IMG/VR virus record: IMGVR_UViG_3300030339_000003 | Coordinates: 62,001 to 126,000 of that record | Strand: one strand, 5' to 3' | DNA length: 64,000 nt | Part shown: one piece after another, positions 3,135-44,913 of the stretch | Position numbering within the stretch: position 1 is the stretch's first letter | How the letters are laid out: each line of letters begins with the position of its first letter | Position numbers and translations under genes: made by a program | Notes under the pieces: model-generated | Seen by the model: only the letters and a program-made list of their open reading frames with translations | Databases searched by the model: none | Told to the model about the DNA's origin: nothing

Positions 3135-4148
3135 TTAACACATCAACTTGTAAACCGTTAGACCTAACCCTAGCACAGCTGAGATGTTCTTCACCGTAGA
3201 ACCGAAACCATCGTGTTGACTTTTTAGTTTCAACATATTGAATTCACTCTTTTGCGTCGCTTCCTTTATTGTGTAACTTTCCTTTAACCTTCCAATGCTA
3301 GAAGCGTGGTTAGCTAACTTAATTTCAAGTTGAGCAATTTTACCGATTTGTCGTATCGCATCATCTGCATATACTTGGATCGATTTCTTATTTTCTACTG
3401 CCTGCTTTTCTAGTTTGATTATTTTCTCTGTATTGCCTCCTTGTAGTTCTGCTTCTCTTTTTGTGGTAAATATACCATACTCTTCCAGTAATTTTTCATT
3501 AATATCATTAAACCCAAAGTATTTCTTTAAATAAACATTTCCATCAATATTTGAAACTATGTACAAGCCGGGTACGGCATTTAGTGTACGCTGACTTTCT
3601 AACTTAATTGCCCTGCCTAATAAATTAACCCAAAGTGATCCATAACGGTTATCAGGATCCACCAGTTGAATGGAGGTCGTCAAACTATTATCTTTTAACT
3701 CTGTGTCTTCTAACTTATCAAGTGCAGCTTGTGGTGTGTTACGCGCGTGTTTATTTGATCGGTTCTCTGATGCAAATAAAGTTATGCCTAACATTTCTGA
3801 ATGTATTACGTCGTTCTCTACTGTATGCTTTGCTGTTAACTTAATAGTCGTTGCAAAAGCACGATTACCAGAATAGGTGCCCAACATTCTTTTCTTTTCT
3901 TCTTCTAACCACACGATCATGTTTTGGATGATTTCTTTATCCAAAGGAGTCAACGCATCGTCAATGTTTAAACGCAACATCGCAATGTCTACATTTAATA
4001 ATTTTACTTCAATGTTTTGTTCTTTATATACTGACGGCTTTTCAGGACGTGCTACTTCGTAAGACAAGCCACCTTTTACTTTAACCCAGATAGAACTATC
4101 TGAAGTGTTATCAATACGATAACTCAACTTAAACCCATTTGTTGACAT
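3135..4148 (-). CDS. Conserved hypothetical protein (phiKZ gp122-like by synteny), coiled-coil and hydrophobic C-terminus
   Basis: 337-aa ORF with AGGA RBS between the MCP and the nvRNAP subunit. Confidence 0.6.
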   Translation of the reverse strand: MSTNGFKLSYRIDNTSDSSIWVKVKGGLSYEVARPEKPSVYKEQNIEVKLLNVDIAMLRLNIDDALTPLDKEIIQNMIVWLEEEKKRMLGTYSGNRAFATTIKLTAKHTVENDVIHSEMLGITLFASENRSNKHARNTPQAALDKLEDTELKDNSLTTSIQLVDPDNRYGSLWVNLLGRAIKLESQRTLNAVPGLYIVSNIDGNVYLKKYFGFNDINEKLLEEYGIFTTKREAELQGGNTEKIIKLEKQAVENKKSIQVYADDAIRQIGKIAQLEIKLANHASSIGRLKESYTIKEATQKSEFNMLKLKSQHDGFGSTVKNISAVLGLGLTVYKLMC

Positions 4149-4205
4149 TACATTTTATCCTAATTTTTTTGGCCAAAAAAATCAACTATGTTCAGTGTTA
4201 CCAAT

Positions 4206-4224
4206 AGATAATATAGGCTTCAAA
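4206..4224 (-). promoter_or_regulatory. Putative early (virion RNAP) promoter TTTGAAGCCTATATTATCT
   Basis: 19-mer identical to 55903-55921; resembles the phiKZ early consensus TATATTAC. Confidence 0.65.
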
Positions 4225-4250
4225 TATAAACGGCTAAATATAAATAAGGT

Positions 4251-4286
4251 TAATACTCCTACTCCCTTGCGGGAGTAGGAGTATTA
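4251..4286 (-). terminator. Hairpin terminator after the MCP
   Basis: 16-bp perfect stem TAATACTCCTACTCCC / GGGAGTAGGAGTATTA; GCAA loop on the minus strand. Confidence 0.85.
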
Positions 4287-4367
4287 TATTTAAGACGACT
4301 GTCTTTTATTACAGCAAGTATTCGGTATCACTTAGACTACCATAGTACGTTGCCGGAATACGAAGAG

Positions 4368-6617
4368 TTAAGGCGCCGTCACGTCTTTGGTAAAAACCGG
4401 TTTCACTTCGGTGTTAACCAGTTCTACTTTGCTTACCGCGTCAGGATCAACAGCGCCAGCAGTAGTAGCAACAGACTGACCAGGAGCGGTACGAATGTTA
4501 ACGCCACCCAGTTTGCTGAAGACACCATTGTCGTCCAGGAAGTCAACAGCGTCGAGGATGTCGAGACGACCCATCAGCACGTTGAGGTTCCATTGACGGT
4601 AGCAAGGCATGGTCATCATGACGCCGTAGTCTACGGTACCACGAGTTACGTTGCCGTGCAGAACGATGTTTTCTTTAGCGATGTTAACGCCAACACCGGC
4701 CAGTGGGTTGATACGATCTTCGGTAGAGTCATTGGTAGGGATAATGAAGATCTTACCAATCATCAGGTCGAAGTTAGTTGGAACGATTTCGAAGTTCTGC
4801 ATGGCAGAAATACGGGAATCGCCAACACGCATCAGGAAGCGCGCCAGGTTCTGGTGAGCAATGACGGTCCATTTGGTTTTCTCAACGCCAGAGTACTCGT
4901 TGATAGCCGCGATGTTCGATTTGAATTCCAGAGCTGCTGCAATATCCTGGATTTCATAAAGAACCAGCGCACAAATGTTTTCGAACACGTCAACGTTGTC
5001 CGGAGAGCTGATATGATCTTGGATACGCAGGGAGCGCAGTACTGCAGCTGGGCGGCAGAACATACGACCTGGCAGATCATTACCACCGGTGTTGTTATCA
5101 ACAACAGGCTGGCCATCGATGCTACGCAGATAATCGAAGTGATTAAACGCTTCATCGAATGCTTTACGGGAACAGCGAGTCTGAATGGTCACACCCATAT
5201 AGGAGATCGCATCATCCAGAGATTCTTTGTTCACGTCTTCTGCACGCACAGGGTATTTGACGGAAACAGGAGTCTGACGGTTAGTGGTCAGTTCTTTGTT
5301 TGCATCATACACTTCCAGGCGGTAACCGAAGTTGCCGTTGTTGGCGTTGGTCAGGTTCATTTCAGGTGTTGCACCGTTAACGGTAGAACCCTGCAGTTTG
5401 CGCATCAGAACTTTCTCTGCATCGGTGCCGTTCACGTGAGTGATACGAGCGCCATCAACCAGACGGGTCAGTGATTCGATAACCACTTTACCGGTAGTCA
5501 GAGACAGGGCAGTTGTTTGACGGTTATAACGACCAGTCATACGGATGTGCAGGTTAGGCTCGTAACCAGCAGTATAGAACGCCTGGAACAGAGCTTTAGC
5601 AGAAGCGCCTTCATCATCAACGATCTGAGATGCGGCAACATGACGCAGAGAAATATCAACGTCACGGTCGTTCGAGTTCTGACCGATAGACGTTGGCGCC
5701 ATATTGGTGTTGGTCATTGAGCTAGTGTCAATGAAGAACTGGATTTTAGTACCGTCGAGAGTACCTTCAACGCCGACTTCGGTGATGCGGATAGATGCTG
5801 ATTCGATATCATCAGTATCAGTCCAACCACGTTGGCCAGGAGCTTGGCAAAGACCGAGCAGTGAAGGAATAGACGCAGGAACCGCCAGCATTTGGGTCAG
5901 GTGGTCTTGACGGCCATATGCGTCGCCGGAAGCGTAAGCAGCAGGAGTAGCAGCTTTGATAGTAGGATCCAGGAACAGATCGTAGTTATCATCAGCTTCT
6001 TCTTCTGGGAATACCGGGTAGATGCGCAGCAGATCGTCTTTGAACAGATCGCCAGTACGCAGCACACCGAAGATCGGAGTCAGTTCAGTCATTGATTCCC
6101 ATGCGTTTGCGCCGTTGACATAAGAGCCAACACCCGCAGCACGGACGTTCATGCGAACACCTTCGTCTTCGTATTTGATCTGGATAGTTTTGTACAGCTG
6201 CTCAGCAGCGGCAGTTTGCAGACGGGTCTGAGTGTTCAGAACGATGTTAACTGCTTTGGTAGTAGCTGAGCTACCTTCAAAGTTGTTCATCGTAAAGCCT
6301 TCAAGACCTTCGCGTTTTGCCATAGACTTTACGTCAGCGTCGGTAATAACGTTTTCAACAGCTTTTGCGTAGTCAGTACGACCCATAGAGGCAGCGACCG
6401 CGGAGAAGTTTGAAGCGTTAACGTTTTGTTTCAGACCGCGACCAAAAGCAGAGACACCGGATTCAGCATTGCTAAAACCATTCAGTTGCTGTTCAGCGGC
6501 GCCAAAAGATTCCATACCGGATAAGGAGGAGAACTTTTTGTTATCAATCAGATCCAGTGTTTCTTTAACCAGGTTACCGGAAAGGCGAACGCTGGCGCGA
6601 ACATCTTTTAAAGTCAT
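4368..6617 (-). CDS. Major capsid protein precursor (phiKZ gp120-like)
   Basis: 749 aa; strong highly-expressed codon bias; N-terminal prohead-protease sites SGMES and EGLEG; own late promoter and terminator; synteny with the DnaB-like helicase. Confidence 0.9.
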   Translation of the reverse strand: MTLKDVRASVRLSGNLVKETLDLIDNKKFSSLSGMESFGAAEQQLNGFSNAESGVSAFGRGLKQNVNASNFSAVAASMGRTDYAKAVENVITDADVKSMAKREGLEGFTMNNFEGSSATTKAVNIVLNTQTRLQTAAAEQLYKTIQIKYEDEGVRMNVRAAGVGSYVNGANAWESMTELTPIFGVLRTGDLFKDDLLRIYPVFPEEEADDNYDLFLDPTIKAATPAAYASGDAYGRQDHLTQMLAVPASIPSLLGLCQAPGQRGWTDTDDIESASIRITEVGVEGTLDGTKIQFFIDTSSMTNTNMAPTSIGQNSNDRDVDISLRHVAASQIVDDEGASAKALFQAFYTAGYEPNLHIRMTGRYNRQTTALSLTTGKVVIESLTRLVDGARITHVNGTDAEKVLMRKLQGSTVNGATPEMNLTNANNGNFGYRLEVYDANKELTTNRQTPVSVKYPVRAEDVNKESLDDAISYMGVTIQTRCSRKAFDEAFNHFDYLRSIDGQPVVDNNTGGNDLPGRMFCRPAAVLRSLRIQDHISSPDNVDVFENICALVLYEIQDIAAALEFKSNIAAINEYSGVEKTKWTVIAHQNLARFLMRVGDSRISAMQNFEIVPTNFDLMIGKIFIIPTNDSTEDRINPLAGVGVNIAKENIVLHGNVTRGTVDYGVMMTMPCYRQWNLNVLMGRLDILDAVDFLDDNGVFSKLGGVNIRTAPGQSVATTAGAVDPDAVSKVELVNTEVKPVFTKDVTAP

Positions 6618-29064: not shown

Positions 29065-29096
29065 TACTACTCCTACCCGTGAGGGTAGGAGTAGTA
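29065..29096. terminator. Bidirectional hairpin between convergent genes
   Basis: TACTACTCCTACCC-GTGA-GGGTAGGAGTAGTA. Confidence 0.85.
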
Positions 29097-29105
29097 GTAT
29101 TATGT

Positions 29106-29795
29106 TTAGAACTTAGTTTCAAGAATTTCGTCAAACACTGAAACGATACGCGCTAACAAAATGAATTGTTTCTTAGCCGCAATCAAATCATGGTGGGAAT
29201 TGATATAACGAATTTCCTGATTAATGACGTTGTTTTCTTTGCTTTCACGCAACTGTTCTTTACCAGTACGCATGACCACTTCAGACAACCCAGTCATTGC
29301 ATCACCGCAACACCAGTTATGACCTTTACCCAGTTCCGCATAATTTTCAGGGTTAACATAGTTGACGTTAACATCGACATATGCACGGAAAGATTGCGCA
29401 AACGCACACACAACAGATTTTAAATAGCCGTAGCGAGTAGGTGGTAAACGGTCAGGGTCGTTGGTCAATGCAAACACTTTATCCGACAATTCAGTAATGG
29501 CCTGATAAAACAGATCATTCAGTGCAATGGAGAAAATGTAAGCTGGACCAAACTTGAGATTAAAGCTCATGATGCTCGAGATAACAATCCAACGCAGATC
29601 TTGATTGTCAGATGAATTATAACGTGTCATCAGTTTGTCTTTAATTTCAGTACGCAATGGGTCGTCGATACAGTGCAGCAAATCCAGAGCTTCATTAAAC
29701 GTTAACTGATGTGGGATAGTAAACCCCAGGGATTCAGTAATAACGTTTTCAAAGTTGTCCGTCATTGTTTTCAATAACTTTAACGTGTCGCTCAT
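29106..29795 (-). CDS. Hypothetical protein
   Basis: 229-aa ORF with AAGGA RBS, last gene of the operon. Confidence 0.65.
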   Translation of the reverse strand: MSDTLKLLKTMTDNFENVITESLGFTIPHQLTFNEALDLLHCIDDPLRTEIKDKLMTRYNSSDNQDLRWIVISSIMSFNLKFGPAYIFSIALNDLFYQAITELSDKVFALTNDPDRLPPTRYGYLKSVVCAFAQSFRAYVDVNVNYVNPENYAELGKGHNWCCGDAMTGLSEVVMRTGKEQLRESKENNVINQEIRYINSHHDLIAAKKQFILLARIVSVFDEILETKF

Positions 29796-29803
29796 AATTA
29801 TCC

Positions 29804-31306
29804 TTAGGCCAATTTACCGAAGCCCAAACGACTTCCTATTTTGTTTAATGCGTCTTGAGCACCCAGCACATTAACTTCAATAAGTTCGTGTGTTGTAGTG
29901 CTTATTTTTTCCATCACGGTTTGTGCATCTGCTTCTTGCATGAATACCATTTTGGTAGGAAGACCACTAGCCGATAACGGAACATTAAAGTTAGGATTAG
30001 TTGCTTTAGCTTTTAGCATCAATTCCTTAATAACTTTAACATCATTGGCCAAACCAGCAAACATGAAACGCAATGCATTATCATACCAGCCAGTCAAATC
30101 TTTTAAGGTATTACGCGCATTCTTAACGATAGTTAAAGTCATGTTGGCAAAGTTAGTGAATTGGCTCACAACGTTTGTCATTTGCTGATAAGTAACCAGA
30201 TAATCATTATTACCAGTAGCTTGTGTAATAGCGCGTACTTTGGCTAATTCACTTGCATCAGTTAAATCGTAAAGTTCTTTTAAGAACCCTTTGATTTCGT
30301 TCTGTTCACCAGTCTTCATATCACGGGTCGCAGAGAAACCAATCAACTGATTGATCTTATCCACAAATGCACTGTCAGCCAATACCTGCGCAGTCTTAAT
30401 GGAAGCAGTCAATTGTTCATTGATAGTGACAAAGTTGTTTTGCAGGGTTTCTTCAGTTACTTTGATGCCAGAAGATTTATCCAGCATTTCTTTTAATGCA
30501 CCAACAATTTCTGGAATGTTAAAAGCTTTAATAACTTCCAGCATGTCAGTCTGCAGGCCAGCCAGATCGCCGTCTAAATAATTTGCACGACTGTTGTTAC
30601 GCAAAACAGTTTGAATGTGTCTGGTGACGCGTTGTTTAGCCGTTGTGGCTGCACGTGAAGAACGCCCAATGCTGTGCAGTACTTTGTCAGCCAAAGGAAT
30701 AACTTCAGTCAGACTACCCAAGGCTTCTTTTTCATTAACCAATTTAGAGGTTAAGAATTTCAGCTGAGGGATACGGCGTTGGTTGGTAGGCAGATCTTCC
30801 AGGTAATGGTTGATATCCAACAAATGCGCCGGGAAACCTAATGCGGTCAGATAACCAGCCAGTTCTTCTTTTAGTTTAGGGAGTTCCGTAGCAATAACTT
30901 CTGCTTGGCGATCACTTGGTCCAAACCCAAAGATGAATTTAACTTTATCCACACACCACAACACAATTTTCTTAATGAAACGGATAACGGCAACAATGCC
31001 TTTTTCCAATCCATCCATAACCGTAGTGAAGAAACCTTCGCCACCAAACCGTGAATTATAAGAACCACCAGTTGGGTCAGCTTTGTTACTTGGCATCGGG
31101 ACGTTATAAAAGTCAGCCAATGCTTTAGTAACGATGCCGGTCTTAACGTAGTGCTCAACACCAGCAACCATTGATTTTACTTTATTTTGTTTGTCGTAAT
31201 GAATAACTTCGGTCAGATCAATTGTCTGATTTTCAGCATCATCAAAGGAGATGTTATCAATGTTGTCATCGCCGTTAATGCTGTCGACGGTAACCGTATT
31301 ATTCAT
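29804..31306 (-). CDS. Head protein (phiKZ gp86-like), internal-head family signature
   Basis: GVEH and GGEG sites, then FFTTVMDGLEKGIVAVIRFIKKIVLW...FIFG. Confidence 0.65.
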   Translation of the reverse strand: MNNTVTVDSINGDDNIDNISFDDAENQTIDLTEVIHYDKQNKVKSMVAGVEHYVKTGIVTKALADFYNVPMPSNKADPTGGSYNSRFGGEGFFTTVMDGLEKGIVAVIRFIKKIVLWCVDKVKFIFGFGPSDRQAEVIATELPKLKEELAGYLTALGFPAHLLDINHYLEDLPTNQRRIPQLKFLTSKLVNEKEALGSLTEVIPLADKVLHSIGRSSRAATTAKQRVTRHIQTVLRNNSRANYLDGDLAGLQTDMLEVIKAFNIPEIVGALKEMLDKSSGIKVTEETLQNNFVTINEQLTASIKTAQVLADSAFVDKINQLIGFSATRDMKTGEQNEIKGFLKELYDLTDASELAKVRAITQATGNNDYLVTYQQMTNVVSQFTNFANMTLTIVKNARNTLKDLTGWYDNALRFMFAGLANDVKVIKELMLKAKATNPNFNVPLSASGLPTKMVFMQEADAQTVMEKISTTTHELIEVNVLGAQDALNKIGSRLGFGKLA

Positions 31307-31712
31307 GGCAACCTCTCAGTTCCTGAAGTAAGTAACTTACCAGGTCTTTATATTCTTGAAGTTCACTGATGCATGGGAGCACAACAGTGCCTTCATTAGT
31401 AACCGGAGTAACTTTAACATAGTTACGACCCAATGAAGTCAGTGAAGATAAAGACAGGTTAATGAAAGACAACACGCCAGTCCAGATCAATTCATAACCG
31501 ATTGGAGACACGGAGTTCCAGCAATCCAGTTTATCACGGTATTTGTCTTTTTCTTCATTTGGGACAAAATACGTTGGGTTATAAATAAAGTGGGCACGAA
31601 CAATGGCGTCGACGTAAGCGTTATCAATCAGCTGACGGTGATATTTTGGACACGTTACTCCCAGTTCGTTCAATTTGGTTTTAACACGTACAATGTGATC
31701 TAAGTGAGACAT
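31299..31712 (-). CDS. Small head protein (phiKZ gp85-like by synteny)
   Basis: 137-aa coupled ORF. Confidence 0.5.
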   Translation of the reverse strand: MSHLDHIVRVKTKLNELGVTCPKYHRQLIDNAYVDAIVRAHFIYNPTYFVPNEEKDKYRDKLDCWNSVSPIGYELIWTGVLSFINLSLSSLTSLGRNYVKVTPVTNEGTVVLPCISELQEYKDLVSYLLQELRGCHE

Positions 31713-31721
31713 AACGAATCC

Positions 31722-33056
31722 TTAAGCTGTAAGTTCATTTAATTTAACATCTAAAATAGCCATTTCATTATTTGCAATAGCTTGTGTGAAATGTTCGAAT
31801 TCTTGTGCTTTGAAATCAGCACCTTGGATAATACGGCCAATCATGCGGTCAACAAAAGTACCTGAAATGATAGGACGGTATTTTTCACAATCACGTAGTA
31901 AGATAGCAGCACGTTCTGCAATCTCAGATTTATCTTTAGCGCTCATGTTAGGAACTTCTTTCATCTTAGCGATGAGTTGTCGGATGCCATCTTCGTAGCG
32001 ACGGAAAGGACTGTTGTACGCGCCGGAATAAGAACTTACCCCATAGATTAATAGCATCAATGGTGCAGTTACGGCAATCCAACAAATAATGCCAGTTACG
32101 CCAGCAACTAAAATCAGTTGGAAGAACATAGACCCAATAAATAAAGCAGTCATGCCACAACCCCAAAGGATTGAACTAGTGCGCGTAGAGGACATTACAG
32201 CAATACCAGCGATCAACCCGCGATCAAAGCCCATACGAATAGCGTAAACGTCTGCCAGTACTTCAGAAGACATTGTAGCCACACCTAAAGATAATGCGCG
32301 TGCGGAGTTACGACGATTGATCAAAGCATTAAAATAAATCAATGTTTCTTCTGGAGATGATTCGGCAATCGTTTCAATATCGTCTTTATTATCAACGGTG
32401 GCTTCTAACAAACCCGCCACACTACGAATAACCATAACGCGTTTTTCAGATGTTGGTTGCGCACCTAATGCGTTAAGGGCGCCGCGAATAATAAAGTTAT
32501 CGTTACTGGTAATATCCACCATGGCGCAGGCAAAGAACGCATGACCCAGTTCGTGCGCAATACAACCGGCGGTAACTTCAGGATGTTCAACTTTAAAACG
32601 TTCCAGTTTTTGCTTTTGGAATAACACATCGACCATTGTTCCCAGATAAAGTTTTAAAGGTACTTCAGCATACGCACCGTAAACTTTGCCCGTTTTATAA
32701 TCGATACTACCTTTAAAGGCTTTACCTTTATTTTTGGTGTACCAGTTAGATAAATTAGTATCAGTAACGTCAAAGTATTTATCAATGCCGGGAATGTTCA
32801 AAATATTGGCAGGTGAAAAATATCCAACGTCAATTGCAAAGTTTGGTTGCTGCATCATTTCGACTGAAATGTTATTAAAGCCAGTGTATTTTTCGATGAC
32901 TGGTAAGATCGAATCTTTAACTGTCCCTTTAAGAACACCATTAACAAGATGCGGGGTAATCGCTTCGGTTAGAGCAGAACGGAAATCATCATTTTGAAAG
33001 TTGATAAATTCTAACCCTGAGCGTTTCCCCTGTTTTAAAAAATCAATACCCAGCAT
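31722..33056 (-). CDS. Virion-block protein with M48-like zinc metalloprotease motifs and a hydrophobic segment (phiKZ gp84-like)
   Basis: CIAHELGHAF (HExxH), downstream SEVLADVYAIRMGF, hydrophobic stretch, and YNSPFRRYE. Start at 33056 (AAGGA RBS) preferred; the track's ATG at 33113 coincides with the late promoter motif. Confidence 0.6.
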   Translation of the reverse strand: MLGIDFLKQGKRSGLEFINFQNDDFRSALTEAITPHLVNGVLKGTVKDSILPVIEKYTGFNNISVEMMQQPNFAIDVGYFSPANILNIPGIDKYFDVTDTNLSNWYTKNKGKAFKGSIDYKTGKVYGAYAEVPLKLYLGTMVDVLFQKQKLERFKVEHPEVTAGCIAHELGHAFFACAMVDITSNDNFIIRGALNALGAQPTSEKRVMVIRSVAGLLEATVDNKDDIETIAESSPEETLIYFNALINRRNSARALSLGVATMSSEVLADVYAIRMGFDRGLIAGIAVMSSTRTSSILWGCGMTALFIGSMFFQLILVAGVTGIICWIAVTAPLMLLIYGVSSYSGAYNSPFRRYEDGIRQLIAKMKEVPNMSAKDKSEIAERAAILLRDCEKYRPIISGTFVDRMIGRIIQGADFKAQEFEHFTQAIANNEMAILDVKLNELTA

Positions 33057-33109
33057 ACTTCCCGTCCTTATTTTATTACTATATAGGCAATTGAATAGAT
33101 TCATTTTAA

Positions 33110-33118
33110 ACATAAAAT
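33110..33118 (-). promoter_or_regulatory. Putative late promoter ATTTTATGT
   Basis: Motif copy upstream of the gp84-86-like operon. Confidence 0.5.
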
Positions 33119-43033: not shown

Positions 43034-43378
43034 TTAATCCCACAACTTAATAAAGAGTTTGTTTTCAGTAATGATGGCGATTTCATAATAAGGCTTACTG
43101 ACACGCGCTAATGAACTCAACGTTGCCATATAAGTTTTGCCATCTTCTACATCATCAAACATGGCATCAATAGTCGCTATTTCATTTTCTAAATAACGTT
43201 CTTCCATACCAAAATAACATTGCGGGATAGTGTAATTGTCTACTACTACCTTACGGACATCTCGATTAAATCCGTTACCCGTAATTACAGAATCAATACG
43301 ATTTAACAAAAGCTCAAATAAGGCGTTTGATTGTTCGCCCGTAATATCTTCTGGGAAATCATACTTAACAATTTCCAT
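43034..43378 (-). CDS. Small accessory orphan (array member C)
   Basis: Start at 43378 inferred from TAATG stop/start overlap (the track starts at 43444). Confidence 0.65.
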   Translation of the reverse strand: MEIVKYDFPEDITGEQSNALFELLLNRIDSVITGNGFNRDVRKVVVDNYTIPQCYFGMEERYLENEIATIDAMFDDVEDGKTYMATLSSLARVSKPYYEIAIITENKLFIKLWD

Positions 43379-43800
43379 TACTTGCTTAGGAACGATTTCA
43401 GTAACCACTTTTTCGTTGTCAGTGTTTTTAGTTCTATTTTCCATATTGGGAAACTCGCCAGTACGTTGATAGTTGCACGATTAAGTTCTAAGAATTCTTT
43501 AATAAATGAACGCGAACCTATTTCAAATTCATTAACGAAATCTAAGTAACTGGTTGATTGATAGTTCAACATTGACGACCAAGATTCTTCACCTAAGAAT
43601 CTGTTCGCGAACTGTTGTTGTATAACCAAAGAATTCTTAGTTATGTGAGTATCCAACTGTTCAAAGAAGTAATCGTCATCAAATGTTGCTGCACATTCCC
43701 CACGCAATATACTGACCTGCAATACATCACAAGCAAAATTAGTGACATCGTCAGTATAACCTTCAGGAATGCGTAATACATCACTGTATATTTTTTCCAC
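43378..43800 (-). CDS. Small accessory orphan (array member B)
   Basis: 140 aa, coupled on both sides. Confidence 0.65.
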   Translation of the reverse strand: MEKIYSDVLRIPEGYTDDVTNFACDVLQVSILRGECAATFDDDYFFEQLDTHITKNSLVIQQQFANRFLGEESWSSMLNYQSTSYLDFVNEFEIGSRSFIKEFLELNRATINVLASFPIWKIELKTLTTKKWLLKSFLSK

Positions 43801-44206
43801 TTGACGCCTTAGTAATTTTAATTTTACCGCTGAGGGTTAATGTTACGTAAGTTCCGGTCAAGTACTTAACACGTATGTTAAAAGCTTGATCTTTATTAAG
43901 TGTTTCAAAATGGTCATTGATGTCGTGTTTTAAATGCACACGGCGAACTTCTGTCGACCAAAACAAAGGACACTGTTCTTCAATAACAAATTGAGCACGG
44001 AAGCTGACGAATTCTTCCCCAGAGAAAATAATATCAACAACGGGATCATTAGATATTCTTAACGAACCATTATAATGAGGATTAACTTTATAATATTTGA
44101 AATGATCTTTAACGATGGAATGAACGACATCGATCTTATTTAATCCAATTGTGCGATAATGATCGGCGTAATGATTACGTAATACACGTTTTGTTTTAAA
44201 CATCAT
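43781..44206 (-). CDS. Small accessory orphan (array member A), first gene of the early operon
   Basis: AAGGGG RBS then ATG ATG at 44206/44203; about 40 bp downstream of TATATTAC. Confidence 0.65.
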   Translation of the reverse strand: MMFKTKRVLRNHYADHYRTIGLNKIDVVHSIVKDHFKYYKVNPHYNGSLRISNDPVVDIIFSGEEFVSFRAQFVIEEQCPLFWSTEVRRVHLKHDINDHFETLNKDQAFNIRVKYLTGTYVTLTLSGKIKITKASSGKNIQ

Positions 44207-44245
44207 AACCCCTTTTAAAAAATAAATAGTTATCAATACTAATAA

Positions 44246-44253
44246 GTAATATA
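44246..44253 (-). promoter_or_regulatory. Early promoter TATATTAC
   Basis: Exact match to the phiKZ early consensus, between a terminator and the operon start. Confidence 0.7.
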
Positions 44254-44270
44254 GTGTTAAAATATAATAA

Positions 44271-44298
44271 CTTACTAACTGGTTGCCCAGTTAGTAAG
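44271..44298 (-). terminator. Hairpin terminator
   Basis: 12-bp stem CTTACTAACTGG / CCAGTTAGTAAG; GCAA loop on the minus strand. Confidence 0.8.
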
Positions 44299-44303
44299 GA
44301 GTG

Positions 44304-44636
44304 TTATTTTTTAGTAATGATGTAATCGCTACGGAACATGTCAGCTGGAGTTGGGTGCCATACGTCTTGATCAAGCACATTTGAAGATGTCCACATAATT
44401 AAAACATCCATAGTTCCAAAATCACTAACGGCATTTCTCTTTGTAACTTCATGTTCTTTATCAGTCCAACTCACAGATTTAATACTAATTGAACCCCTAG
44501 GGAAATCTAACAAGAAATTCAAAGCAGTACCAAAGGTTACATATTTCAATGTTCCTTTTGCTTCGAGTTCAGCAATGAGTTTCTTATCGATTTTGTCTTT
44601 TACAGTTTTTAATGAAGGTTTATAAGGACTAAGCAT
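44304..44636 (-). CDS. DUF2829/Tad2-like protein 2 (candidate immune-signal sponge)
   Basis: VTFGTALNFL...SVSW...VWHPTPADMFRSDYII; start at 44636 with GGAG RBS. Confidence 0.6.
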   Translation of the reverse strand: MLSPYKPSLKTVKDKIDKKLIAELEAKGTLKYVTFGTALNFLLDFPRGSISIKSVSWTDKEHEVTKRNAVSDFGTMDVLIMWTSSNVLDQDVWHPTPADMFRSDYIITKK

Positions 44637-44913
44637 CAGCAAGCTCCAATACCCATTCAGTGTCAAAAAGATCTGCGGTAGACGGGTGCCACGGCAGCAC
44701 TAAGCCATTAGAAAAAGTTATTACGGCCATTCGGAGTTTAAATTCTTCACTATACTGAATAGTGACGCGTGCTGTTTCATTACTCCAATGTTTGCACCAC
44801 ATACTTACTTTACCGGGCAATGCACTAACTAACATTCCCCATGCTTCACTAAATGTTTGTTTTTCTAAGAACTTTTCTTCTTCCAAATACATCATTGTTT
44901 CTAAAGCGGTCAT
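44629..44913 (-). CDS. DUF2829/Tad2-like protein 1 (candidate immune-signal sponge)
   Basis: QTFSEAWGML...GKVSMWCKHW...LPWHPSTADLFDTEWVL. Confidence 0.6.
   Translation of the reverse strand: MTALETMMYLEEEKFLEKQTFSEAWGMLVSALPGKVSMWCKHWSNETARVTIQYSEEFKLRMAVITFSNGLVLPWHPSTADLFDTEWVLELADA

What the first reader, a model, noticed from the sequence alone, without database searches (positions are those of the whole stretch)
31722..33056. Apparently intact M48-like membrane zinc protease within the head-protein block
HELGH, a downstream E-x-x-A-D helix (SEVLADVYAIRMGF), a long hydrophobic segment and a Y-N-S-P-x-x-R element follow the order of the HtpX/Ste24 (M48) motifs. The gene heads a late operon with capsid-interior proteins. 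phiKZ-type heads are matured by a serine protease encoded elsewhere, so this would be a second protease, possibly ejected and acting at the host inner membrane or the early infection vesicle.
Basis: partly seen in the sequence, partly recalled or inferred. Interest (0 to 1): 0.6.

Follow-up and report, generated by a model that had tools for sequence, protein, structure and literature searches.

The report
Head-packaged M48-like zinc protease gene
This intact jumbo-phage gene encodes a zinc protease related to the HtpX/Ste24/BepA (M48) family; its relatives are packed inside the phage head. The family was already flagged in print as an uncharacterised "zincin-like metallopeptidase", so the gene is a new member of a known, untested family, and what it cuts is unknown.

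Summary
**Observation: confirmed.** Window 31722-33056 (-) is an intact 444-aa gene with a good ribosome-binding site. It contains HELGH, E-V-L-A-D 97 residues later, a 47-residue hydrophobic hairpin, then YNSPFRR. All 82 compared homologues (16-98% identity), including phiKZ gp84, EL gp52 and SPN3US gp45, keep HExGH, ExxAD and the hydrophobic stretch.

**Family assignment: M48-like, not a Pfam member.**
- An AlphaFold model of residues 20-295 (pLDDT 85) was compared with 48,161 PDB chains. The top matches are Ste24p, ZMPSTE24, BepA and the minigluzincins.
- Pfam Peptidase_M48 gives no hit for the window protein. The SPN3US orthologue scores 17.7 bits against a 20.3-bit cut-off.

**Location: head-packaged in relatives.** SPN3US gp45 is a head protein that loses a 20-residue propeptide. 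That cut aligns with the invariant G-L-E16 here.

**Second protease: supported.** A separate gp175-like prohead protease lies elsewhere in the genome.

**Prior art.** Iyer et al. 2021 named this family (AMR59696.1, identical to SPN3US gp45) a conserved, uncharacterised zincin-like metallopeptidase of phiKZ-like phages.

**Untested.** Ejection and action at the host membrane remain an inference. No tool here could test it.

The parts
31722..33056 (-). Coding sequence of the M48-like zinc metallopeptidase (444 aa plus stop; P0001). It is the orthologue of phiKZ gp84, EL gp52, RisingSun gp57 and SPN3US gp45.
   Evidence: ORF and translation. PHROG 2767, E 7e-74. Found in 125 phage records. Profile hits to phiKZ (E 2.8e-17) and SPN3US (E 1.1e-31). 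Single copy in its own genome.
33065..33069 (-). Ribosome-binding site AAGGA, 8 nt upstream of the ATG at 33056.
   Evidence: Read from the sequence. The in-frame ATG at 33113 has no such site and is not conserved.
33009..33056 (-). Residues 1-16: a short N-terminal propeptide ending in G-L-E16. It is the predicted prohead-protease cut site and capsid-targeting peptide.
   Evidence: E16 is invariant and G14 nearly so. E16 aligns with E20 of SPN3US gp45. SPN3US gp45's 20-residue propeptide is removed in the head: PMC5694885. The motif S/A/G-x-E is cited in PMC10449902. Residues 1-17 have pLDDT below 50.
32172..32999 (-). Residues 20-295: the soluble catalytic domain. It holds a backing helix, a small beta-sheet, the active-site helix, a helical insert, and the start of the glutamate helix.
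   Evidence: AlphaFold model m8c52a5d9ce1c, pLDDT 85.3, pTM 0.83. In an unbiased structure search the top matches are Ste24p (Z 8.3), ZMPSTE24 (7.9), BepA (7.2, rmsd 2.5 A over 103 residues), proabylysin (6.5), selecase (6.1) and projannalysin (6.0).
32541..32555 (-). HELGH (H168, E169, H172): two predicted zinc ligands and the general-base glutamate.
   Evidence: Invariant in all 82 sequences. Aligned to the HExxH of ZMPSTE24 and HtpX.
32250..32264 (-). EVLAD (E265, A268, D269): the predicted third zinc ligand, at the start of the glutamate helix.
   Evidence: Invariant. Aligned to the E-F-Q-A-D of ZMPSTE24. The same ExxAD motif is present in all four E. coli M48 paralogues.
32031..32171 (-). 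Residues 296-342: a hydrophobic helical hairpin, predicted to insert in a membrane.
   Evidence: Kyte-Doolittle 19-residue mean reaches 2.3. Modelled as helices H264-318 and H320-342. A hydrophobic stretch of 29-80 residues is present in all 82 homologues.
31998..32018 (-). YNSPFRR (Y347, R352, R353): the candidate counterpart of the M48 third motif H-P-x4-R, with Tyr in place of His.
   Evidence: Y347 and R353 are invariant. The family pattern is Y-[ND]-x3-R-R. All four E. coli M48 paralogues carry H-P-x4-R 43-54 residues after ExxAD, with the same first-to-last spacing. The equivalence is inferred and was not checked by superposition.
31725..32030 (-). Residues 343-444: the C-terminal helical domain, with invariant or near-invariant E421 and H422 (H422 = 31791-31793).
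   Evidence: Helices H350-367, H373-393, H401-411 and H415-443. H422 is invariant among 37 sequences. It is not kept in phiKZ gp84 or SPN3US gp45.
31299..31712 (-). Second gene of the unit: a 137-aa virion structural protein (like phiKZ gp85 / SPN3US gp46).
   Evidence: phrog_14520 'virion structural protein', E 4e-27. Same position in EL, RisingSun, phiKZ and SPN3US. A 9-nt gap separates it from the protease gene.
29804..31306 (-). Third gene: a 500-aa virion protein in the position of phiKZ gp86 and SPN3US gp47 (an ejection-protein candidate).
   Evidence: phrog_14541, E 8.6e-63. Overlaps the previous gene by 8 nt. G-L-E101 is followed by a hydrophobic/amphipathic stretch. This parallels SPN3US gp47, which is cut at ALE-111 ahead of a predicted membrane helix: PMC5694885. 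The match to SPN3US gp47 rests on gene position only; no direct sequence comparison was made.
29106..29795 (-). Fourth gene: a 229-aa protein of unknown function.
   Evidence: ORF. No PHROG or Pfam family. A gene of similar size holds this position in EL and RisingSun.
29065..29096 (.). Two-way hairpin terminator (14-bp stem, 7 G-C pairs) that closes the four-gene unit. It also ends the convergent 977-aa gene.

Best explanation
**What it is.** The gene encodes a zinc metallopeptidase of the gluzincin type. Its catalytic core is built like the M48 family (HtpX, Ste24, BepA) and the minigluzincins.
- Inferred: H168, H172 and E265 hold the zinc, and E169 acts as the general base.

**How it reaches the virion.**
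- Shown for the SPN3US orthologue, inferred here: the protein is made with a 16-residue leader. The separate serine prohead protease removes the leader after G-L-E16 inside the prohead. The mature enzyme then travels as a low-copy protein inside the head.

**Other parts.**
- Shown at sequence and model level: after the glutamate helix comes a conserved hydrophobic hairpin, followed by a helical C-terminal domain.
- Inferred: that domain returns a Tyr/Arg motif towards the active site.

**Where it most likely acts.** This is inference only, at roughly 0.4 probability. The enzyme leaves the head with the DNA and the other ejection proteins. Its hairpin inserts into the host inner membrane or the early infection vesicle. 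There it cuts host or phage membrane-associated proteins.

**Confidence by step.**
- Enzyme identity: about 0.85.
- Head packaging: about 0.8.
- The overall figure given for this explanation is for the enzyme identity and head packaging together.
For: **Sequence conservation**
- The catalytic motifs are invariant across 82 sequences down to 16% identity. This includes the general-base Glu, which metal binding alone does not require.

**Structure**
- The search of 48,161 chains did not rely on sequence. M48 proteins and minigluzincins fill the top four places and six of the top ten. BlaR1 (M56) also appears.
- The other non-helical matches are also zincins.

**Sub-threshold sequence links, all pointing the same way**
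- A family profile against PDB sequences aligns both HELGH and ExxAD to ZMPSTE24 (E 0.2).
- SPN3US gp45 against Pfam Peptidase_M48: E 0.0034, 17.7 of 20.3 bits, one stretch covering both motifs. NCBIfam HtpX: E 0.045.
- The window family matches that orthologue with hhalign probability 99%, E 8e-18.
- Related viral clusters in the ESM Atlas have 15-45% of members carrying PF01435.
- BFVD lists distant look-alikes named 'Peptidase M48 domain-containing protein' and 'Zincin protease [Bacillus phage AR9]'.

**Head location**
- phiKZ gp84 is annotated 'structural head protein'.
- SPN3US gp45 is a processed head protein (PMC5694885).
- Several orthologues are named virion structural proteins.

**Membrane action**
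- The hydrophobic hairpin is conserved.
- The gene shares an operon with the gene in the position of SPN3US gp47. That protein is an essential head protein with a predicted membrane helix and is taken to be ejected.
- From established knowledge: characterised M48 enzymes act on membrane or envelope proteins.

**Fitness**
- phiKZ orf84 has no filtered transposon insertions, while orf85-86 can be deleted (PMC12676376).
Against: - No Pfam, NCBIfam or PDB sequence hit reaches threshold for the window protein.
- Foldseek against the PDB gives no hit with E below 0.001.
- The best structural Z scores (7.2-8.3) are in the range the tool calls 'middling'. The Ste24 alignments have rmsd of 8 A.
- hhalign against a thin four-sequence E. 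coli M48 profile is weak: probability 31%, with only HExxH aligned.
- Zinc-site geometry could not be measured, because model coordinates are not exposed.
- The His of the M48 third motif is a Tyr here.
- Nothing shows ejection. gp84 is not among the eight validated injected phiKZ proteins, and it was not among the proteins reported as assayed.
- The hairpin is shorter and less hydrophobic in phiKZ gp84 and SPN3US gp45.
- A hydrophobic hairpin could instead anchor the protein inside the head.
Confidence: 0.7

Rival explanations
1. The enzyme works inside the prohead or head as a second maturation protease. It would trim head or inner-body proteins alongside the serine prohead protease and would never act in the host. 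This is the suggestion of Iyer et al. 2021.
For: - The suggestion is published for this family (PMC7824862).
- The protein is a head component in relatives.
- Proteolysis of head proteins in these phages is extensive (PMC12676376; PMC10449902).
Against: - Mapped head-protein cuts in phiKZ follow the motif S/A/G-x-E, which the paper ties to gp175-driven proteolysis.
- SPN3US prohead-protease mutants lack the normal head-protein cleavages (PMC7411985). No second specificity is needed to explain the data.
- This rival gives no role to the conserved hydrophobic hairpin.
- It cannot be excluded. The enzyme might need the serine protease to activate it.
Confidence: 0.3
2. The protein is a structural head component that keeps a zinc site for stability only and no longer cuts anything.
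For: - No activity has been shown for any member.
- The M48 third-motif His is replaced by Tyr.
- Sequence models of M48 are not reached.
Against: - The general-base Glu of HExxH is invariant in 82 sequences at 16-98% identity. So are the Ala and Asp of ExxAD. Metal binding alone would not constrain these residues.
- From established knowledge: Tyr serves as the transition-state-stabilising residue in other gluzincins such as thermolysin.
Confidence: 0.08
3. The motifs are a chance resemblance and the protein is not a zincin at all.
For: HExxH alone is a short motif that arises by chance in about 1% of proteins of this size. That figure is my own rough estimate from amino-acid frequencies.
Against: - Three ordered motifs are conserved family-wide.
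- A structure search that does not use sequence returns M48 proteins and minigluzincins first.
- The ESM Atlas and BFVD neighbours are peptidases.
Confidence: 0.02

Closest known systems
SPN3US gp45 = SEGD1 gp047 (AMR59696.1), phiKZ gp84, EL gp52, RisingSun gp57. This is the 'conserved, uncharacterized zincin-like metallopeptidase' of group 1 jumbo phages (Iyer et al. 2021, PMC7824862); PHROG 2767.
   Same: - Orthologous. hhalign probability 99%, E 8e-18 to AMR59696.1, which is 100% identical to SPN3US gp45.
- Same length, motifs, hydrophobic stretch and N-terminal [SAG]-x-E.
- Same gene neighbourhood.
   Different: - Only 16-40% identical to the named phages.
- The hairpin here is longer and more hydrophobic than in phiKZ gp84 or SPN3US gp45.
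- H422 is not kept in those two.
- In phiKZ an extra gene (gp83) separates it from the DNA polymerase gene, which there lies on the same strand.
M48 peptidases: E. coli BepA and HtpX, yeast Ste24p, human ZMPSTE24 (Pfam PF01435).
   Same: - Best structural matches to the catalytic domain.
- HExxH, then ExxAD, then a seven-residue motif ending in Arg, in the same order.
- Sub-threshold co-linear sequence matches.
   Different: - Below the Pfam cut-off.
- HExxH-to-Glu spacing is 94-101 residues, against 59-83 in E. coli.
- Tyr replaces the His of H-P-x4-R.
- The membrane helices do not flank or enclose the catalytic domain as in HtpX and Ste24. A single hairpin is inserted between the glutamate helix and the third motif.
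- It is packaged in a virus head.
Minigluzincins (proabylysin 4jiu, projannalysin 4jix, selecase 4qhf).
   Same: The minimal M48-like core (backing helix, small sheet, active-site helix, glutamate helix) matches at Z 6.0-6.5 over 93-102 residues.
   Different: - Those are soluble archaeal proteins of about 100 residues.
- This protein adds a 90-residue N-terminal part, a helical insert, a hairpin and a C-terminal domain.
BlaR1 / M56 sensor-proteases.
   Same: A zincin domain joined to membrane helices. Structural match Z 5.1. It also appears among the ESM Atlas neighbours.
   Different: - A weaker match than M48.
- BlaR1 is a signal transducer with a penicillin-binding sensor domain, which is absent here.
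'Zincin protease' proteins of Bacillus jumbo phage AR9, and 'Peptidase M48 domain-containing' proteins of uncultured myoviruses.
   Same: Distant fold matches among viral proteins, at Foldseek E 1e-3 to 1e-2 with probability about 1.0.
   Different: - TM-scores are only 0.32-0.44.
- Homology beyond the shared fold was not tested.

Membership tests
Peptidase M48 (Pfam PF01435 / MEROPS M48) | Score above the curated Pfam cut-off (20.3 bits). | tested here: not met
   - No hit for the window protein or anywhere in its genome.
- 2 of 37 family members reach E of about 0.1.
- The SPN3US orthologue scores 17.7 bits, E 0.0034.
Peptidase M48 (Pfam PF01435 / MEROPS M48) | HExxH on the active-site helix. 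| tested here: met
   HELGH at residues 168-172, inside helix H158-199. Invariant in 82 sequences.
Peptidase M48 (Pfam PF01435 / MEROPS M48) | Third zinc ligand Glu in an E-x-x-A-D motif on a downstream helix. | tested here: met
   - EVLAD at 265-269, at the start of helix H264-318. Invariant.
- The same motif occurs in all four E. coli M48 paralogues.
- Aligned to the ZMPSTE24 motif.
Peptidase M48 (Pfam PF01435 / MEROPS M48) | Third motif H-P-x4-R after the glutamate helix. | tested here: inconclusive
   - All four E. coli paralogues have it 43-54 residues after ExxAD.
- The phage family has Y-[ND]-x3-R-R with the same spacing, but Tyr for His, 82 residues after ExxAD and beyond the hairpin.
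- The equivalence was not checked in three dimensions.
Peptidase M48 (Pfam PF01435 / MEROPS M48) | Catalytic-core fold shared with solved M48 structures. | tested here: met
   Ste24p Z 8.3, ZMPSTE24 7.9, BepA 7.2 (rmsd 2.5 A over 103 residues) and 3c37 5.7 rank at or near the top of 48,161 chains. The Z values are moderate.
Peptidase M48 (Pfam PF01435 / MEROPS M48) | Zinc binding and peptidase activity. | not testable with these tools
   Needs the protein, or at least model coordinates, which the tools do not expose.
Integral-membrane M48 (HtpX / Ste24 type) | Membrane helices before and around the catalytic motifs. | tested here: not met
   Only one hydrophobic region, residues 296-342, after the glutamate helix. 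Residues 20-295 fold as a soluble domain.
Group 1 jumbo-phage zincin-like metallopeptidase (Iyer et al. 2021; PHROG 2767) | Sequence homology to the named exemplar AMR59696.1. | tested here: met
   - hhalign probability 99%, E 8e-18 over 411 columns.
- PHROG 2767, E 7e-74.
- The exemplar was located in SEGD1.
Group 1 jumbo-phage zincin-like metallopeptidase (Iyer et al. 2021; PHROG 2767) | Conserved position beside the DNA polymerase gene and ahead of two virion-protein genes. | tested here: met
   Same order in EL, RisingSun, SPN3US and SEGD1. In phiKZ the order holds with one extra gene.
Group 1 jumbo-phage zincin-like metallopeptidase (Iyer et al. 2021; PHROG 2767) | Presence in the head and removal of a short N-terminal propeptide. 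| not testable with these tools
   - Shown by mass spectrometry for SPN3US gp45 (PMC5694885).
- Here only the aligned, invariant G-L-E16 can be shown.
phiKZ gp175-type prohead serine protease | Homology to gp175. | tested here: not met
   The gp175 homologue of this genome lies elsewhere, at G000:C1:171802-172410 (E 2e-20). The gene studied here is a different protein.

The most novel reading that the evidence does not exclude
The enzyme is ejected with the genome. It inserts its hairpin into the inner membrane as the early infection vesicle forms. There it cleaves host or phage membrane proteins. This would make it a virion-delivered membrane protease that helps build or protect the first compartment of nucleus-forming phages.
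Probability: 0.3. Interest if true: 0.75.

Novelty: new member of a known kind. Interest (0 to 1): 0.42.

Why it matters
- **Open question it touches.** phiKZ-like jumbo phages carry dozens of head proteins of unknown function. How their early lipid vesicle forms is also unknown.
- **Why this protein is a good handle.** It is a conserved enzyme with a clear catalytic residue and a membrane hairpin, and it is packaged in the head. The phiKZ orthologue tolerated no filtered transposon insertions. That makes it one of the few head proteins for which a single point mutant (E169A) gives a clean test.
- **Limits.** For this window alone the result is ordinary. It is one more orthologue of a family already flagged as a zincin.
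- **What this work adds.**
  - The M48-type assignment.
  - The match of the cut site to the SPN3US data.
  - The odd placement of the hairpin.
  - The Tyr-for-His third motif.

Tried and rejected
**Sequence searches that gave nothing usable**
- Pfam and NCBIfam scans of the window protein: noise only.
- phmmer against PDB sequences: nothing.
- Scanning 37 family members singly against Pfam: scattered weak peptidase hits (M48 in two, Metallopep in two, M54 and Zn_peptidase_2 in one each).
- hhalign of the family against my own four-sequence E. coli M48 alignment: weak (probability 31%). The reference profile was too thin, so I give it little weight.

**Structure searches**
- Searching with the whole 444-residue model returned only helical-bundle look-alikes for residues 269-444. 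I therefore folded residues 20-295 alone.
- Foldseek of that domain against the PDB was also below threshold, with ZMPSTE24 and Ste24p at ranks 6 and 17.

**Side checks**
- Pfam Peptidase_S77 did not find the prohead protease even in phiKZ. I used the gp175 protein itself instead.
- phiKZ shell protein gp54 found nothing in this genome. It also found nothing in EL or RisingSun. That blank therefore says nothing, and I do not claim nucleus formation for this phage.

**Literature**
- Searches for gp84 / PHIKZ084 found no functional statement.
- One search term ('KZ084') matched only unrelated DOIs.
- Supplements of the early-vesicle preprint and of Iyer et al. are not held.

**Not used**
- The large profile search: no claim here rests on absence of relatives.
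- The reads tools.
- The complex predictor: I do not claim binding to the neighbouring proteins.
- Any genetic code other than table 11.

Full report
**1. What is in the sequence**

The minus strand carries an open frame at 31722..33113.
- AAGGA lies 8 nt upstream of it.
- All but a few of the homologues begin at the aligned Met.
- The ATG at 33113 has no ribosome-binding site.

Re-translation of the coordinates confirms each motif:

| Feature | Residues | Window coordinates |
|---|---|---|
| HELGH | 168-172 | 32541-32555 |
| EVLAD | 265-269 | 32250-32264 |
| Hydrophobic stretch | 296-342 | 32031-32171 |
| YNSPFRR | 347-353 | 31998-32018 |

The hydrophobic stretch has a Kyte-Doolittle 19-residue mean of up to 2.3. 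The gene is intact and present once in its genome. That genome is a 231,366-bp virus record with terminal repeats; the window is bases 62001-126000 of it.

**2. What kind of phage**

The window also encodes the following:
- a major head protein;
- an internal head protein;
- several virion structural proteins;
- a DnaB-like helicase;
- a DNA polymerase;
- RNA polymerase beta-subunit pieces.

The nearest relatives of the protein are Erwinia phage RisingSun gp57 (38% identity) and Pseudomonas phage EL gp52 (36%). In all, 125 phage records hold a match. This is a phiKZ-like jumbo phage. I could not confirm a nuclear-shell gene. phiKZ gp54 finds nothing here, but it also finds nothing in EL or RisingSun, so the test is blind.

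**3. Conservation**

The word-based protein search returned 77 homologues.
- In a 37-sequence alignment (A1), H168, E169, G171, H172, E265, A268, D269, Y347, R353 and H422 are invariant.
- A profile of A1 finds phiKZ gp84 (E 2.8e-17) and SPN3US gp45 (E 1.1e-31).
- With these added, at 16-17% identity, HExGH, ExxAD, Y347, R353 and E16 remain invariant. H422 does not.
- A script over 82 sequences found HExGH, ExxAD 94-101 residues later and a hydrophobic stretch in every one. It also found an N-terminal [SAG]-x-E in every one, though in a few sequences the first match is not the aligned site.

The invariance of E169 matters. It is the general base, not a metal ligand, so its conservation points to retained catalysis.

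**4. Fold**

The full-length AlphaFold model has pLDDT 76.9 and pTM 0.77. Fold searches with it returned only helical-bundle look-alikes for the C-terminal part. I therefore modelled residues 20-295 alone, which gave pLDDT 85.3 and pTM 0.83.

VIA-align compared that domain with 48,161 representative PDB chains without any sequence filter. Only 33 chains scored Z of 5 or more. The leading zincin matches were:

| Chain | Z | Note |
|---|---|---|
| Ste24p | 8.3 | |
| ZMPSTE24 | 7.9 | |
| BepA | 7.2 | rmsd 2.5 A over 103 residues |
| Proabylysin | 6.5 | minigluzincin |
| Selecase | 6.1 | minigluzincin |
| Projannalysin | 6.0 | minigluzincin |
| DPP III | 6.0 | zincin |
| 3c37 | 5.7 | M48 |
| BlaR1 | 5.1 | M56 |

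The non-zincin rows align only to the helical insert at residues 160-240.

These Z values are moderate, and the Ste24 alignments have rmsd of 8 A. Foldseek against the PDB stays below threshold. The fold evidence is therefore convincing only together with the motifs.

Independent neighbours agree.
- The ESM Atlas shape search returns viral clusters first. One of them has 18% of members carrying PF01435. Below them come other zinc peptidases.
- The Atlas feature search finds a viral cluster at score 0.95 with 15% PF01435 members. Its structure search finds a 'Peptidase family M48' viral cluster.
- BFVD lists 'Peptidase M48 domain-containing protein', 'Beta-barrel assembly-enhancing protease' and 'Zincin protease [Bacillus phage AR9]' below the family members.

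**5. Sequence links to M48**

The window protein has no Pfam, NCBIfam or PDB hit at threshold. The sub-threshold signals are specific.
- The A1 profile aligns both HELGH and ExxAD to ZMPSTE24 (E 0.2).
- SPN3US gp45 scores 17.7 bits against Peptidase_M48 (cut-off 20.3, E 0.0034). The single stretch covers both motifs.
- SPN3US gp45 also touches the NCBIfam HtpX model.

All four E. coli M48 paralogues carry three motifs in order: HExxH, ExxAD 59-83 residues later, and H-P-x4-R 43-54 residues after that. The phage family has the same order. Its third motif is Y-[ND]-x3-R-R, with the same seven-residue span and Tyr in place of His. It lies 82 residues after ExxAD, and the extra length is about that of the inserted hairpin. 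I treat this equivalence as an inference, because I could not superpose that part.

**6. Verdict on membership**

The protein works like an M48-type gluzincin and shares the core fold. It is not an M48 member by the curated model. It also lacks the HtpX/Ste24 membrane architecture: the catalytic domain is soluble and a single hairpin follows the glutamate helix. 'M48-like gluzincin of a phage-specific family' is the accurate label.

**7. Location in the virion**
- phiKZ gp84 is annotated as a structural head protein.
- Several orthologues are named virion structural proteins.
- For SPN3US, mass spectrometry showed that gp45 is a head protein with a 20-residue N-terminal propeptide. That length is comparable to the T4 capsid-targeting sequences (PMC5694885).

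I checked the gene numbering. The paper places the gp47 start at 44887/44899, which matches the third gene of the unit in the record. That makes gp45 the gene at 43079-44431. In the alignment, SPN3US A-S-E20 falls exactly on the invariant G-L-E16 of the window protein. It also fits the S/A/G-x-E rule of the phiKZ-type prohead protease (PMC10449902).

The window's genome encodes that protease separately, at G000:C1:171802-172410 (E 2e-20 to phiKZ gp175).

**8. Gene context**
- The gene is followed after 9 nt by a 137-aa virion protein gene.
- Next, overlapping by 8 nt, comes a 500-aa virion protein gene. After a further 8 nt comes a 229-aa gene.
- A 14-bp-stem hairpin at 29065-29096 closes the unit. 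It faces the convergent 977-aa gene.
- Upstream, 78 nt away, a DNA polymerase gene runs the other way.
- The same order holds in EL, RisingSun, SPN3US and SEGD1. It holds in phiKZ with one extra gene.

The 500-aa protein sits in the position of SPN3US gp47. That protein is an essential low-copy head protein, cut at ALE-111 ahead of a predicted membrane helix, and taken to be an ejection protein (PMC5694885; PMC7411985). The window protein has G-L-E101 followed by a hydrophobic/amphipathic stretch. I did not compare the two sequences directly, so this link rests on gene position. Expression timing was not tested.

**9. Prior art**

[quoted passage not shown] They suggested it might catalyse further cleavages during maturation.
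- I located AMR59696.1 as SEGD1 gp047.
- It is 100% identical to SPN3US gp45.
- It matches the A1 profile at 99% probability.

The zincin call for this family is therefore published. In the held literature I found none of the following for this family:
- an M48-type assignment;
- a mention of the hairpin;
- a link to the SPN3US propeptide;
- any experiment on function.

Public records still call the protein hypothetical or a virion structural protein, and PHROG 2767 is 'unknown function'.

**10. Function**

Shown, or directly supported by homology:
- a conserved gluzincin active site on an M48-like core;
- head packaging and N-terminal trimming in relatives;
- a conserved hydrophobic hairpin.

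Inferred: where the enzyme acts. I favour action after ejection at the inner membrane or the early infection vesicle, at about 0.4 probability. Three reasons:
- A membrane hairpin has no obvious use inside a membrane-free capsid.
- The operon partner is an ejection-protein candidate.
- Characterised M48 enzymes act on membrane or envelope proteins (established knowledge).

The main rival is a maturation role inside the head, at about 0.3. The mapped head-protein cuts follow the serine protease's motif. SPN3US protease mutants lack the normal head-protein cleavages. Neither point excludes the rival.

phiKZ transposon data show no filtered insertions in orf84, and only 9 unfiltered sites in 1242 bp. 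orf85-86 can be deleted (PMC12676376). This suggests gp84 matters for fitness, although polar or other effects are not excluded. gp84 was not among the proteins reported as assayed for injection.

**11. Verdict**

The gene is a new member of a family already flagged as a zincin. Interest is moderate. The case is ordinary as annotation. It does offer a well-defined, untested enzyme at a point in the life cycle of nucleus-forming phages where little is known.

Noticed in passing
window 29065-29096: A perfect 14-bp-stem hairpin (7 G-C pairs, 4-nt loop) with T-rich tails on both strands. It lies between the convergent 977-aa gene and the four-gene unit. It looks like a two-way terminator.
   Followed up: partly
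window 33057-33113; L002 7932-9377: An in-frame ATG at 33113 would add 19 residues, but it has no ribosome-binding site and is not conserved. RisingSun gp57 is annotated about 23 residues longer than the aligned start. Two metagenomic homologues (P0033, P0056) also carry such extensions. These are probably mis-called starts.
   Followed up: partly
window 29804-31306 (-): The 500-aa virion protein has G-L-E101 followed directly by a hydrophobic/amphipathic stretch (residues 104-122). This mirrors SPN3US gp47, which is cut at ALE-111 ahead of a predicted membrane helix.
   Followed up: partly
protein P0063: One homologue cluster (453 aa, 21 member sequences) is named 'SDR family oxidoreductase [Pseudomonas aeruginosa]' by NCBI and UniRef. 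It has the length of EL gp52 and the same 36% identity to the query. The name looks like an annotation error on phage DNA inside a bacterial assembly.
   Followed up: no
window 4001-6000; ORFs 4368-6617 (-) and 4350-5474 (+): The G+C peak (0.469, against about 0.40) coincides with the major head protein gene (phrog_3231, E 4e-140). The 374-aa ORF on the opposite strand lies inside that gene and is probably spurious.
   Followed up: partly
L005 (phiKZ 76000-92000): In phiKZ the DNA polymerase gene (gp82) is on the same strand as gp84. An extra virion gene (gp83) lies between them on the opposite strand. In EL, RisingSun, SPN3US and this window the polymerase gene is directly adjacent and divergent.
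   Followed up: no
phiKZ orf84-87 (PMC12676376, supplements 2 and 3): orf84, 85, 86 and 87 all have zero filtered transposon insertions. Yet the paper reports that orf85-86 tolerate deletion and attributes their lack of insertions to polar effects. If so, the signal for orf84 is not explained by polarity onto 85-86.
   Followed up: partly
window 1-64000: No tRNA or tmRNA genes were found in the window.
   Followed up: yes
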